Shown here: one piece after another, positions 37,585 to 40,750 of the stretch
Numbering within the stretch: position 1 is the first letter of the stretch
Layout: each line of letters begins with the position of its first letter
Origin: Vitrella brassicaformis CCMP3155
Taxonomy: Eukaryota > Protista > Chromerida
Length of the DNA: 64,000 nt
Direction: 5' to 3'
NCBI GenBank assembly: GCA_001179505.1
Contig: CDMY01000398.1
Location: 1 to 64,000, forward strand
Made by a program: the position numbers and the translations under genes
The notes under the pieces: model-generated
Databases searched by the model: none
What the model was told of the DNA's origin: nothing
What the model saw: only the letters and a program-made list of their open reading frames with translations

Positions 37585-38427
37585 ACTTGGCGGGGTACCC
37601 GACGGAAACCTAGTGCCGTCCTCCTCCCTCACGAAAGCAAGCCAACACCGGAAAACAAGGACAAGAAAAGGGAACAACGGGAACGAAAAGGAAGGTAAGA
37701 CAAAGAAAAGGCTCAAAAAGGAGGCTGAGGGAAAGACAGATGCCCGATCGTCGAGACTGCGAGCTTGAACGTGCGTACGGTGCTCAGATCAAGGGGATAG
37801 ACTCCCGAGGTTCTTCATCGACAAGTCAGTATGGTGCTTCCTCTCCCTGTCCCCCTCTGCGTTGTGAGCCTCCCCTATGCACCGCCAGAGTCTGACGTGG
37901 AGCTATGCGAGGAGCTCTGGTGGATCTGGTGCCCGCTTCGTCGGGGGCCTTCCTGTATCTAAGTGATGAACCACGCCACTGACGATGATGCTGGTCGGGT
38001 GGACGTGGCAAGAGTGCATCCCGCCGTCCCAAGGCCGTTTTACTGTCTGTTTCGCCTGGCTGTTTGTTCATCGCTCTTTGCTGTGTCTGGCTATGTTGCC
38101 GTGTGTGTGCGCCAGAGGAACGATGACTGGTCTGACTGTGTAGTGGGCTGTCGTCTGCTCTTTCCGTAAGTACTGTCCGGAGGGATCAATATTCAATGTA
38201 ATTCTGCGTCTATGATCTGCCTCTGTGTGCTACGGGAGCCGGTTTGGCAGGAGTTCTGACTTAGCAGTCAGTAAAGGATGGATCTGGAAGACCAATGTGT
38301 GCCAGACACCCATTCAAAAACGTGCACAAACCACATCCCAGGCTAGCCAGCCATCCGAAGGCACACCCCGCATCCACCCCCCTCTCTCATCCACCCCCGA
38401 CCACAAACACATGGATCATGGAAGTGC

Positions 38428-39245
38428 TCACTTGCTGCTGCTGGCCGTGGGTTTGGCTCTGCTTTCGGCCTCCCCCTTCTTGAACGCGCTAACAAACTCC
38501 TTGCCAGCATCCAGACTCACATACTCCTCACCTACACACACAACCACGCAAGCACACACGCACCACGCCAGGTGTGCCATGTCGGTGTGTCGTTTTGTGT
38601 AGTGTACGCACCCTGCATGCCCTGCTCGCTGTAGTTGATGTCGTCGGCGGCCGCCTCGCCCATCAGCTTGGTCACCAGCGCCTTGAGCTCCTGCAGGAAT
38701 AGCTGGTCTGCACACAACACACGCGGCACACAGCCATCCCGGCACGGTGTCTTACCAAGCCACACATCAAGCTCCCTGTCTGTCTGCCTATCCATCCATC
38801 CATCCATCCATCTCTCGCGCACCGACCCACTCACCCGTGTAGATGAGGCCGTATTCTTCAACCTGCCAGGAGCCAGTCTTGCCTGCAGGAATTACATATA
38901 CACAACACACCACGTGCAGAGCACCACATAAGTGCGTGTGTGCATACCCTTCTGCGTTTCGAATACGACCCACAGCTCGCCGAACTCGTCCACGCCCTCC
39001 TCGTCGCCACCAAACGTGTCTGCAGATCAGATCAGATGACGCTCGTACCACATCGCACCGTCTGCTTGTCAGATGTGACCGCTTACTCAGGTCGAGGCTG
39101 ATGACGCGGACGGCCTTCATCTTGGCGCTCCCTGCGACGAACAAACAACCGGCACGCACCGACCGTGTGTATGTTCGTGCTGTGGTACATCCTTACAGAA
39201 GCCACTGCCATCGGTATGAAGCGTCACGACTTTCTCCAGCTTCAT
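38428..39245 (-). CDS. 137-aa intron-containing protein resembling a bacteriophage hypothetical-protein family
   Basis: Six exons joined by five phase-1 GT-AG introns: MKLEKVVTLHTDGSGF|WSAKMKAVRVISLDL|NTFGGDEEGVDEFGELWVVFETQK|GKTGSWQVEEYGLIYT|DQLFLQELKALVTKLMGEAAADDINYSEQGMQ|GEEYVSLDAGKEFVSAFKKGEAESRAKPTASSSK*. The phage similarity is from recall, not from a search. Confidence 0.75.
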
Positions 39246-39460
39246 CCTCACACACCGAGATGGAGATGGCCGGCAATCAGAGGGAGATCTTTGTTGCGAC
39301 AGGGACGTCAAGCCGGCGCGTCACGTCAGTTGAGATCTCAAAAGTGGAGGGAAGGTAAATTCACGAGCCATTGCAGTCCCCTCCAGTCCTCCGTGGCCGC
39401 ACAGCGCCTGTCATCCTGTCTGTCTACCTGCTTGTCTGTCTGTCAGTCTGTGTCTGTGTG

Positions 39461-40688
39461 TCATGATGCGAGTCCGAGCATAGTCAGCACTTGCACAAAC
39501 AGCTCGGAGGAAAACACAGACAGAGACCAAACCTCACCCGCAGCCTGCACGGTGGATGGACACACATACGCATCCATCCGTCACACAGAGGCATCTTTTG
39601 TGTCCCAGCCAGGGGGGCTGTGCGTGTGCCTGTGTGGCCTGCCTGACCCAGTAAGTGAGTGATAGTATTCTGAGTCGCTTGAGTATGATGTAGCAGCACA
39701 CGGCCACGAAGAACAGAAAGGCGTACCAAATGAAGGTGCTGTCCATCTCAGTCCTGCACACACCACACACACACACACTTATCAGCATGCGCTCGCCTGT
39801 CTTGTCGGATGGCTCACTTTCGTTTCAGTTTGCTGAGCAGCGCCCCGGCCTTTTGCAGGCGCTGCCCATACGCTGCACTCAAGACAGACAGGGCAACCCA
39901 CCAGCCATCATCACGCCACACGCCCTTCAGCGGCCATTGCATGCAGCTCCAAACGCATCCCTACCTGAGTAGGCCTCATCTGTGTTGCCGATGGTCGTCG
40001 AGCCATGATCTGTGACACATATAACACACACACACACAGCAGAGATCACGATACACACCAACAGCAAGTGTGTCGGTCGGTCATATGCTGGCTTGCTCAC
40101 CGAGTGCCTCTGTGACCTGGTGCATTCTCTGCAGTTCCGTCTGCATCATCTGGCGGGTCTCACGCAGCCCACTCCTCAACTCCTCATCCCCACCACCGAT
40201 GCGCTGACGGGGCGCCCCCGATGCTGATGCCGATGCTGATGCTGACGCCGACCCGCCGCTGCCCGCCAGCAAATTGGTCCGCCGGCTCTCCGACAGGTGC
40301 TGCTGCACCATGCCGTACCAACGACGAAGCTGATCCTCATACCTGTGCATGGCAACACACGAGCACATTGGATCAGGGCATTATCCCATCGAACGCGCCT
40401 ACCTGGCGATTTGCTTCGCTGCCCTCTCGTGCTCTTCTGGCGTGGCGCCGTGCTCCCTCGCCAAGGCCCTCTGTAGCTGCGCAATCTGCTCCCGCAGGCT
40501 CCTGCAAACAAACAGATAACACACACAAGGGTCAGCCTCTGTCTTCACCTGATGGATTGCATATCCGTTGCGTACTGTCGTGTGGCCTCTGCGACATCTG
40601 GAGCGACGGCTGCGGGCGAGGGGAGGGCAGAGAGCGCCTCAAACAGGCTCTGGTCCAACGATGCGACACTCTGCATCGATGTCAACAT
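39461..40688 (-). CDS. SEC20: Sec20/BNIP1-like Qb-SNARE
   Basis: N-terminal helices, SNARE coil (LRETRQMMQTELQRMHQVTEALDHGSTTIGNTDEAYSAYGQRLQKAGALLSKLKRKTEMD) and a C-terminal TM (FIWYAFLFFVAVCCYIILKRL). Confidence 0.8.
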
Positions 40689-40750
40689 GTCGGGATGGCA
40701 GATCCGGGGAGCCGAACAGATGGACGGCTGGAACAGATGGCATGCAAGCG

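What the first reader, a model, noticed from the sequence alone, without database searches (positions are those of the whole stretch)
38428..39245. Spliceosomal-intron-containing gene encoding a bacteriophage-like protein (candidate domesticated phage gene)
Seen: six short exons that splice exactly in frame through five canonical GT-AG introns, all phase 1, into a compact 137-aa protein. No single ORF in the track shows it. Recall and inference: the pattern TL(H)TDG.G.WS...KAV.V..L.L ... FGEL.V.F ... W.V...GLIYTD..F..EL ... D..YSEQGMQG..YVS.D.G..F matches, as I remember it, a family of uncharacterised proteins from uncultured tailed phages, and it resembles no standard eukaryotic family I know. 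An intact, intron-acquired copy in an algal nuclear genome would imply an old phage-to-eukaryote transfer kept under selection, with an unknown function.
Basis: partly seen in the sequence, partly recalled or inferred. Interest (0 to 1): 0.85.

Follow-up and report, generated by a model that had tools for sequence, protein, structure and literature searches.

The report
Phage-family gene domesticated in Vitrella
An expressed, intron-bearing nuclear gene of the alga Vitrella brassicaformis encodes a small protein whose thousands of other known relatives are nearly all found on bacteriophage DNA. It is a clean example of a phage gene adopted by a eukaryote, and what the protein does is unknown.

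Summary
There are six exons on the minus strand (39245-38428) and five GT-AG introns, all phase 1, giving a 137-aa product. Three transcript assemblies match the window at 100% with exactly these introns removed.

The window is Vitrella brassicaformis CCMP3155 nuclear DNA, and the neighbouring genes are eukaryotic (Sec20, ubiquitin-RING, Rieske/PaO).

The protein belongs to a large family with motifs TDGxGxWS, GLIYTD and YSEQGMQG. The family has 675 clusters at 50% identity and about 5,600 at 90%. Pfam, PHROGs, NCBIfam and PADLOC do not contain it.

Members sit on tailed-phage contigs: 311 IMG/VR loci against 4 in 185,579 bacterial and archaeal genomes. Two cultured Xanthomonas jumbo phages also carry it.

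The Vitrella protein keeps every conserved residue and scores like a typical phage member. Its codon composition is host-like.

The AlphaFold model is confident (pLDDT 93) and resembles no solved structure, so function stays unknown. I infer a ligand-binding or catalytic pocket formed by the three conserved loops.

The donor lineage, the age of the transfer and the presence of the gene in other eukaryotes are unresolved. A truncated pseudogene copy lies elsewhere in the genome.

The scan noted this same stretch once before (s1-218444), not on other DNA.

The parts
39197..39245 (-). Exon 1 (ATG at 39245). Encodes M1 to the first base of W17 and carries the invariant TDGSG motif.
   Evidence: The transcript block ends at 39196/39197.
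39132..39196 (-). Intron 1: 65 nt, GT-AG, phase 1.
39087..39131 (-). Exon 2.
39020..39086 (-). Intron 2: 67 nt, GT-AG, phase 1.
38948..39019 (-). Exon 3.
38883..38947 (-). Intron 3: 65 nt, GT-AG, phase 1.
38835..38882 (-). Exon 4. Carries the invariant W61 and the GLIYT part of the second motif.
38708..38834 (-). Intron 4: 127 nt, GT-AG, phase 1. Contains a (GGAT)n run.
38612..38707 (-). Exon 5. Carries D72 and the NYSEQGMQ motif.
38532..38611 (-). Intron 5: 80 nt, GT-AG, phase 1.
38428..38531 (-). Coding part of exon 6. The stop codon TGA is at 38430-38428.
37783..38427 (-). 3' UTR (645 nt) as found in transcript assemblies L220 and L222.
38284..38431 (-). Optional sixth intron used only by the GenBank model CEM09960.1 (141 aa, tail ...K-SILY). 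The three transcript assemblies do not splice it.
39246..39460 (-). 215-nt spacer between the Sec20 stop codon and this gene's ATG. It is present without a break in transcript assemblies L220 and L221. L222 starts at 39460.
39461..40747 (-). Upstream Sec20-domain gene, as far as the transcripts cover it. It lies on the same transcript contigs as the phage-like gene.

Best explanation
This is a real, transcribed nuclear gene of Vitrella brassicaformis. It descends from a gene of the tailed-phage gene pool, acquired by horizontal transfer either from a phage directly or from a prophage in a bacterium.

After integration it gained five spliceosomal introns, with an optional sixth, and took on the host's GC-rich codon composition. 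It kept every residue that the phage family conserves, which points to continued purifying selection.

The product is a compact, single-domain alpha/beta protein of 137 aa. It starts at residue 1 of the family alignment, as several phage members do, with no N-terminal extension, so it is most likely cytosolic.

The domain belongs to a very large phage family that no domain library has catalogued. I infer that the three invariant loops (TDGxGxWS, GLIYTD, YSEQGMQG), with two invariant Trp, one Asp and one Glu, form a binding or catalytic pocket for a small ligand such as a nucleotide, base or sugar. I also infer that the protein acts on its own rather than with a fixed partner.

Shown here: the gene structure, its transcription, family membership, the phage distribution of the family and the confident fold. 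Inferred: the direction and route of transfer, selection, cellular location and the biochemical role.

The confidence of 0.75 applies to the origin and domestication. The pocket mechanism alone I put at about 0.4.
For: **Gene and transcripts**

**Host genome context**
- The gene lies on contig CDMY01000398.1 of GCA_001179505.1, between Sec20 and ubiquitin-RING, Rieske/PaO, PITH and acetyl-CoA synthetase genes.

**Family size**
- 675 representative clusters at E<=1e-3, of which 277 are at E<=1e-10.
- 5,605 clusters at 90% identity with E<=1e-5.

**Phage setting**
- 311 confirmed IMG/VR loci against 4 loci in 185,579 GTDB species genomes. The two search patterns have similar sensitivity, 88% and 81% of unbiased hits.
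- Neighbouring genes include tail fibre and baseplate connector (L026), virion protein (L038), sheath, gp19 and T4 baseplate (L094), GP88, RNR, ligase, exonuclease, and MoxR/VWA families with strong PHROG hits.
- Cultured members are Xanthomonas phages BUDD (USV40928.1) and X1.

**Conservation**
- All 6 invariant and 20 nearly invariant family positions are present in the Vitrella protein.
- Against an HMM built without the eukaryotic rows it scores 139.2 bits. The median of 38 held-out members is 138.7.

**Amelioration**
- GC3 is 0.82 for this gene and 0.70 for the neighbouring Sec20 ORF. The phage homologues have a median of 0.50.

**Fold**
- The AF2 model has pLDDT 93.2 and pTM 0.85.
- It matches a BFVD model of an uncultured Caudovirales protein at TM 0.73/0.84.

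**No fixed partner**
- No neighbour family holds a constant position next to the gene across loci.
Against: - The sister group of the Vitrella sequence is unresolved. Support is 40-85% and the neighbours change between trees. A constrained alternative is not rejected. So 'nested within phages' rests on distribution, not on a supported branch.
- The root of the family is unknown.
- Most of the thousands of metagenomic members have no examined context.
- Two ESM Atlas clusters of the same shape are labelled Bacteria. One isolate bacterial genome (Rapidithrix thailandica) has a fused copy in a chromosomal-looking setting.
- Two unnamed BFVD matches (M1HTR4, A0A1J0F9Z3) could belong to viruses of eukaryotes. 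I could not check this.
- There is no direct measure of selection such as dN/dS, because no intact orthologue was retrievable.
- Nothing tests the proposed pocket or any activity.
- No protein-level evidence of translation exists.
Confidence: 0.75

Rival explanations
1. The origin in the phage gene pool is the same, but the immediate donor was not a phage particle. The gene reached Vitrella through a bacterial genome carrying a prophage (prey or symbiont), or through a giant virus of algae that had itself picked up the phage gene.
For: Four prokaryotic genome loci carry the family, one of them in an isolate genome. ESM Atlas look-alike clusters are labelled Bacteria. Two good BFVD matches (M1HTR4, 37% identity; A0A1J0F9Z3) have no name in the tool. 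They are absent from the 50,697 GenBank phage records searched by tblastn, which found only the two Xanthomonas phages. They may therefore come from non-phage viruses. From memory only, their accession ranges include chloroviruses.
Against: Three of the four prokaryotic loci look like phage or prophage DNA: short co-directional ORFs, RNR, MoxR/VWA. No contig examined showed giant-virus hallmarks. Genes on the large contigs are short (about 0.5 kb) and co-directional, as in phages.
Confidence: 0.25
2. The gene is a transcribed relic. It was acquired from a phage but no longer serves the alga, and it is carried along on read-through transcripts of the Sec20 gene.
For: Two of the three transcript assemblies join it to the upstream Sec20 ORF. 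A second genomic copy is clearly decaying. No function is known.
Against: The ORF is intact across six exons. All 26 conserved positions are kept and the family HMM score is at the median. GC3 is fully host-like, which implies long residence without decay. The pseudogene copy shows what decay looks like here: a 14-nt deletion of the TDGSG motif and a W-to-C change in the GELW segment.
Confidence: 0.07
3. The family is an old cellular family also native to eukaryotes, and the phage copies are the acquired ones.
For: An AlphaFold DB cluster representative, A0A0G4ET91 (136 aa, 56% identity), shows at least one further diverged copy in a chromerid proteome.
Against: Among the hits whose source or context I could see, the only eukaryotic ones are Vitrella entries and MMETSP transcripts. 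There is no Pfam or eukaryotic family. Phage members span GC 0.34-0.62 and many phage types.
Confidence: 0.04
4. The gene is an artefact: bacterial or phage contamination in the assembly, or a chance splice model.
For: None found.
Against: There are five spliceosomal introns, removed exactly in three transcript assemblies. The gene sits in an 87-kb contig among eukaryotic genes. Its codon composition is host-like.
Confidence: 0.01

Closest known systems
USV40928.1, hypothetical protein of Xanthomonas phage BUDD (ON758385.1), and its counterpart in Xanthomonas phage X1 (OQ427096.1)
   Same: It is a member of the same family (tblastn E 5e-7 with the Vitrella protein, 9e-12 with a metagenomic member) with the same motifs and a similar length of 129 aa. 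These two are the only cultured-virus members found among 50,697 GenBank phage records.
   Different: It is intronless, only about 32% identical, and encoded in a block of small hypothetical genes of a 199-kb tailed phage next to baseplate genes. Its function is unknown too.
A0A6J5TA95, uncharacterised protein of an uncultured Caudovirales phage (BFVD model)
   Same: It is 44% identical, with the same predicted fold (TM 0.73 by query, 0.84 by target, rmsd 2.4 over 125 columns).
   Different: It is 118 aa and lacks the Vitrella C-terminal low-complexity tail. It has no annotation.
Known phage-to-eukaryote gene transfers, for example GH25 lysozymes in several eukaryotes and the T-odd-phage-type mitochondrial RNA polymerase and Twinkle helicase (from my own knowledge, not tested here)
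   Same: A gene of phage origin is fixed in a eukaryotic nuclear genome, has acquired introns and is expressed.
   Different: Those genes have known enzymatic roles and, for the mitochondrial ones, a pan-eukaryotic distribution. This one is an ORFan-type phage accessory protein of unknown function, so far seen in one algal lineage.
Solved folds with the best, weak structural scores: PilZ domains, LAGLIDADG half-domains, the Cas9 PI domain
   Same: Only a loosely similar arrangement of strands and helices.
   Different: VIA-align Z is at most 4.2, where unrelated models typically reach 7-8. Foldseek PDB E is at least 0.2 with TM at most 0.35. Swiss-Prot AFDB TM is at most 0.39. I do not consider any of these related.

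Membership tests
Uncatalogued phage family with motifs TDGxGxWS / GLIYTD / YSEQGMQG (defined here from alignment A2) | All three conserved motifs and the invariant residues G13, W17, W61, D72, E99 and G101 are present. | tested here: met
   The invariant and nearly invariant columns are all occupied by the consensus residue in the Vitrella protein.
Uncatalogued phage family with motifs TDGxGxWS / GLIYTD / YSEQGMQG (defined here from alignment A2) | The profile score is in the range of accepted members when the profile is built without the candidate. | tested here: met
   The score is 139.2 bits against a median of 138.7 (range 53.7-149.5) for 38 held-out members, which puts it at rank 18 of 39.
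Uncatalogued phage family with motifs TDGxGxWS / GLIYTD / YSEQGMQG (defined here from alignment A2) | The predicted fold is the same as that of a phage member. | tested here: met
   The match to A0A6J5TA95 has TM 0.73/0.84 and E 2e-9. The model is confident.
Uncatalogued phage family with motifs TDGxGxWS / GLIYTD / YSEQGMQG (defined here from alignment A2) | The family is carried by tailed phages. | tested here: met
   See for structural and PHROG-specific neighbours and the two cultured Caudoviricetes. Only a sample of contexts was examined.
Any family of Pfam-A, PHROGs v4, NCBIfam 20 or PADLOC-DB 2 | A significant match to a library profile. | tested here: not met
   Neither the Vitrella protein nor up to ten phage members gave a match below E 0.1.
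Spliceosomal-intron-containing nuclear gene | GT-AG boundaries and removal of the introns in mature transcripts. | tested here: met
Domesticated (functional) horizontally acquired gene | Purifying selection and production of a protein in the host. | tested here: inconclusive
   The ORF is intact, all conserved residues are kept, composition is host-like and the gene is transcribed. No dN/dS could be computed and no proteomic evidence was available.
Known solved folds (PDB) | Structural similarity above noise. | tested here: not met
   The profile-sequence search gave E>0.7, Foldseek gave E>=0.2, and the VIA-align wide search gave Z<=4.2.

The most novel reading that the evidence does not exclude
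The family is a new fold whose three invariant loops form a pocket for a nucleotide-like or sugar-like small molecule. Phages of many kinds would use it as a free-standing accessory or counter-defence factor. Vitrella would have co-opted it for its own biology, and the promoter-less phage gene would have become expressed by landing in the 3' region of the Sec20 gene and riding on a dicistronic-looking transcript.
Probability: 0.15. Interest if true: 0.8.

Novelty: new member of a known kind. Interest (0 to 1): 0.55.

Why it matters
Transfers from bacteriophages to eukaryotic nuclei that end in an intact, spliced, expressed gene are rare, and most documented cases involve enzymes of known function.

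Here the adopted gene is a typical phage 'dark matter' protein. Its family has thousands of members and a confidently predicted structure unlike any solved one, yet no domain library contains it.

An alga has kept every conserved residue through intron gain and full compositional amelioration. That argues the domain has a self-contained activity that works in both a bacterial and a eukaryotic cell. The family is therefore a good target for structural and biochemical work.

The locus also offers a small model for how a foreign, promoter-less gene becomes expressed, through its link to the Sec20 transcript.

Tried and rejected
**Function by library**
- Pfam, PHROGs, NCBIfam and PADLOC gave nothing.

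**Function by structure**
- Nothing rose above noise in Foldseek PDB, VIA-align wide, AFDB clusters, AFDB Swiss-Prot, ESM Atlas or a PDB profile search. The language-model search was weak too, with a best score of 0.66.

**Function by neighbourhood**
- I clustered 2,820 ORFs from 92 loci. No neighbour family keeps a fixed position next to the gene.
- The annotated neighbours are heterogeneous: MoxR ATPase, VWA/metallopeptidase, ClpP, cell-wall hydrolase, GP88, DNA methylase, ligase, RNR.

**A DNA-repair or ADP-ribose link**
- One member overlaps the start of a WGR-PARP gene beside Ku, PolX and UvrD. Another is fused to a BRCT-containing 1,013-aa protein.
- I rejected this as a general clue. 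tblastn found these partners only in those single lineages among 219 loci.

**Donor lineage**
- The quick 208-row tree, the careful 70-row tree and an AU test gave no supported sister group.
- A 9-residue loop between F51 and W61 first looked Vitrella-specific and tied to intron 3. It is shared with several IMG/VR members, so I dropped that idea.

**Other checks that gave nothing**
- Intron secondary structure is not beyond shuffled controls.
- There are no plasmid homologues.
- Literature searches on the accessions and on Vitrella phage transfer found nothing relevant.
- I could not retrieve A0A0G4ET91, M1HTR4 or A0A1J0F9Z3 as sequences or names.

Full report
**1. The observation**

Reading the minus strand of 38300-39400 and assembling the exons by script gives six exons:
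- 39245-39197
- 39131-39087
- 39019-38948
- 38882-38835
- 38707-38612
- 38531-38428

They are separated by five introns of 65, 67, 65, 127 and 80 nt. Every intron starts with GT and ends with AG, and every one interrupts a codon after its first base (phase 1). The joined CDS is 414 nt and encodes 137 residues plus a stop. GC is 0.59 and GC3 is 0.82.

I could not hand in a spliced sequence by reference. I therefore searched with a window ORF that happens to contain exon 5, restricted to that region. This returned two proteins from MMETSP transcriptomes. One of them, P0002, is identical over all 137 residues to the spliced model.

Looking up where P0002 is encoded returned three transcript-like contigs: two JGI assemblies and one Logan assembly of SRR646408. 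All three align to the window at 100% identity, in blocks whose ends lie at these five junctions (adjacent blastn blocks overlap by 0-4 nt).

**2. Where the window comes from**

Cluster look-up names the organism as Vitrella brassicaformis CCMP3155. The GenBank protein is CEM09960.1 / A0A0G4FBF1, an 'unnamed protein product' of 141 aa.

The gene lies on contig CDMY01000398.1 (87 kb) of GCA_001179505.1. A Sec20-domain gene is upstream. Downstream are a ubiquitin-RING gene, a Rieske/PaO gene, a PITH gene and an acetyl-CoA synthetase gene. This is ordinary nuclear DNA, not a contaminant.

It uses a sixth intron whose GT donor (38431) overlaps the stop codon and whose acceptor ends at 38284, giving the tail K-SILY. 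None of the three transcript assemblies splices it. Their last exon runs unbroken from 38532 to 37783 or 37948. The 137-aa product is therefore the one with transcript support here.

**3. The protein family**

Pfam gives nothing, and PHROGs gives nothing significant, for the Vitrella protein. NCBIfam, PADLOC and PHROGs also give nothing for up to ten family members.

An exhaustive phmmer search of 1.84 billion cluster representatives found 675 proteins at E<=1e-3 and 277 at E<=1e-10. Nearly all are 100-170 aa and 40-54% identical. A profile search of the 5.8-billion-protein collection found 5,605 clusters at 90% identity with E<=1e-5. Where these carry a name it is almost always 'hypothetical protein'.

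An alignment of 115 members (A2) shows six invariant positions: G13, W17, W61, D72, E99 and G101. Twenty more are nearly invariant. They are grouped in three loop motifs, TDGxGxWS, GLIYTD and YSEQGMQG, plus VSxD and F116.

**4. Are the relatives phage proteins?**

Yes, as far as I sampled.

*Distribution.* A scan of IMG/VR with the peptide YSEQGMQ gave 319 stretches, of which 311 were confirmed as relatives. A scan of one genome for each of 185,579 bacterial and archaeal species with EQGMQGxx[YF]V gave 4. Among the pattern-independent hits, the two patterns are present in 88% and 81% of members. The contrast is therefore real.

*Neighbourhoods.* The ORFs are dense, short and mostly co-directional. 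Their products match phage-specific PHROGs:
- phrog_1987, phrog_1250, phrog_1297 (ATPase) and phrog_1314
- ligase, exonuclease and ribonucleotide reductase
- tail fibre and baseplate-wedge connector on L026
- a virion structural protein on L038

One member sits between a tail sheath gene and gp19 tail tube / T4 baseplate genes.

*Cultured phages.* Among 50,697 GenBank phage records, two Caudoviricetes of about 200 kb carry the gene: Xanthomonas phages BUDD and X1. In BUDD it is USV40928.1, a hypothetical protein in a block of small genes next to the baseplate module. No plasmid carries it.

*The four prokaryotic loci.* Three look like phage or prophage DNA (RNR; MoxR plus VWA/metallopeptidase; SprT-like with many small ORFs). 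One, in the isolate Rapidithrix thailandica, is a 247-aa fused form beside a DUF3686 ATPase in a chromosomal-looking setting.

**5. How the Vitrella protein compares**

It keeps the consensus residue at all 26 conserved positions.

Against an HMM built without the two eukaryotic rows it scores 139.2 bits. Thirty-eight held-out members have a median of 138.7, which puts it at rank 18 of 39.

Its GC3 (0.82) is like that of the neighbouring Sec20 ORF (0.70). The phage genes have a median of 0.50.

It starts at residue 1 of the family alignment, as several phage members do, with no N-terminal extension. It adds only a short low-complexity C-terminal tail.

Together with the five introns, this describes a gene that has resided in the nucleus long enough to be fully naturalised while staying under constraint. 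That is an inference. I could not compute dN/dS, because the only other genomic copy is a pseudogene.

**6. Phylogeny**

A 208-row tree (126 columns) places the Vitrella pair inside the family on a stem of 0.53 changes per site, similar to ordinary terminal branches. Its neighbours have only 62-85% support.

A careful 70-row tree gives different neighbours with 40/17 support.

Holding Vitrella together with the best-scoring IMG/VR group (L013, L014, L016, L018, L019) is not rejected, and that tree even has a higher likelihood than the free quick tree. Those members share with Vitrella a 9-residue loop between F51 and W61, where 184 of 208 members have 4 residues. This is a hint at the donor group, not a proof.

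The donor lineage is therefore unresolved. The direction of transfer rests on distribution: one algal lineage against thousands of phage-associated clusters spanning GC 0.34-0.62 and several phage types.

**7. Structure and function**

AlphaFold2 with the 115-row alignment gives a confident model (pLDDT 93.2, pTM 0.85). It has three long strands (2-10, 23-34, 44-51), helices at 63-66, 73-87 and 89-93, strands at 95-97 and 107-112, and a final helix at 114-129.

The model matches phage family members in BFVD, an AFDB cluster representative at 56% identity and two ESM Atlas clusters. It matches nothing with a known structure or function:
- Foldseek against PDB gives E>=0.2 and TM<=0.35.
- VIA-align against 48,161 chains gives Z<=4.2.
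- Swiss-Prot models give TM<=0.39.
- The PDB profile search gives E>0.7.

Gene neighbourhood gives no consistent partner.

Two isolated contexts hinted at DNA repair. One member is translationally coupled to a WGR-PARP gene beside Ku, PolX and UvrD. Another is fused to a BRCT-containing protein. These are confined to single lineages, so I do not generalise from them.

My working mechanism is an inference from the conservation pattern alone. I propose a free-standing domain whose three invariant loops, with two Trp, one Asp and one Glu, form a small-ligand binding or catalytic site. I put this at about 40%.

**8. Other copies**

The second Vitrella hit, CEM27206.1 (P0009, 289 aa, 'Sec20 C-terminal domain-containing protein'), lies on contig CDMY01000632.1. 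It comes from a 3.3-kb segmental duplication of the Sec20 gene plus the 5' part of this gene, at 82.5% nucleotide identity overall.

In that copy a 14-nt deletion removes the TDGSG motif, a Trp in the GELW segment has become Cys, and the homology stops inside exon 5. It is a pseudogene fragment that the annotation fused to Sec20.

A further MMETSP ORF (P0001, 135 aa) is identical for about the first 114 residues and then only 59% identical over the last exon. No matching exon exists in the window or in the paralogous locus. Its origin, whether another strain or a third copy, is open.

**9. Verdict**

This is a spliceosomal-intron-bearing, transcribed nuclear gene of a chromerid alga that belongs to a large, uncatalogued family of tailed-phage proteins.

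It is a new example of a known kind of event, phage-to-eukaryote gene transfer followed by domestication. Its added interest is that the family is 'dark matter' with a confidently predicted structure that resembles no solved one.

Still open are the donor, the age, the distribution in other eukaryotes, translation, and the function.

Noticed in passing
window 39196-40747 (minus strand): Transcript assemblies L220 and L221 carry the spliced Sec20 ORF and the phage-like ORF on one contig. The two ORFs are joined through an unspliced 350-nt block containing the Sec20 stop (39463-39461), a 215-nt spacer and exon 1. A third assembly (L222) begins at 39460, the first base after the Sec20 stop. This is either a dicistronic or read-through mRNA, or an assembler merging overlapping UTRs. 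It suggests how a promoter-less foreign gene could have become expressed.
   Followed up: partly
window 38284-38431: The GenBank model CEM09960.1 uses a sixth intron whose donor overlaps the stop codon, giving 141 aa ending in SILY. The three transcript assemblies leave it unspliced, giving 137 aa. It is either an alternative 3' end or an annotation artefact.
   Followed up: partly
L093:6800-7400 (Vitrella contig CDMY01000632.1): A 3.3-kb segmental duplication of the Sec20 gene plus the 5' part of this gene. The copy has a 14-nt deletion of the TDGSG motif and ends inside exon 5. It is annotated as a chimeric 289-aa 'Sec20' protein (CEM27206.1).
   Followed up: yes
P0001 (MMETSP Transcript_49232): This variant is identical to the window's protein for about the first 114 residues but only 59% identical over the last exon. 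No matching exon was found in the window or in L093. It may come from another strain or a third copy.
   Followed up: partly
AFDB cluster representative A0A0G4ET91: A 136-aa protein, 56% identical, with the same fold (TM 0.81). Its accession lies in the block of the chromerid proteomes. It could be a diverged Vitrella paralogue or a Chromera orthologue, and I could not retrieve it.
   Followed up: no
L099:1400-18300 and L100 (138-174 kb metagenomic phage-like contigs): A large phage-like contig encodes a eukaryote-type WGR-PARP_reg-PARP protein directly after, and overlapping, the family member. Ku, a PolX-type polymerase, NT5C, HNH and UvrD lie nearby. This repair-like gene cluster is unusual for a phage.
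   Followed up: partly
L094:8001-11042 (T4-like contig, 143 kb): A 1,013-aa fusion protein has a BRCT domain at residues 198-268 and the family domain at 707-814. It is encoded between the tail sheath and tail tube genes.
   Followed up: partly
L011:7971-8714 (Rapidithrix thailandica JCM 23209): This is the only isolate bacterial genome found with the family. It is a 247-aa form with a C-terminal extension, beside a DUF3686 'DNA repair ATPase' / DUF7902 gene and a YqiJ-like gene. It may be a chromosomal rather than a prophage setting.
   Followed up: partly
window 38532-39196 (introns 1, 3, 5): These introns have AC-rich 5' halves and GT-rich 3' halves, as another note on this genome describes. 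Their predicted folding energy is not beyond dinucleotide shuffles (z from -1.96 to +1.3).
   Followed up: yes
window 38780-38815: A (GGAT)n microsatellite lies inside intron 4 and is conserved in the paralogous locus.
   Followed up: no
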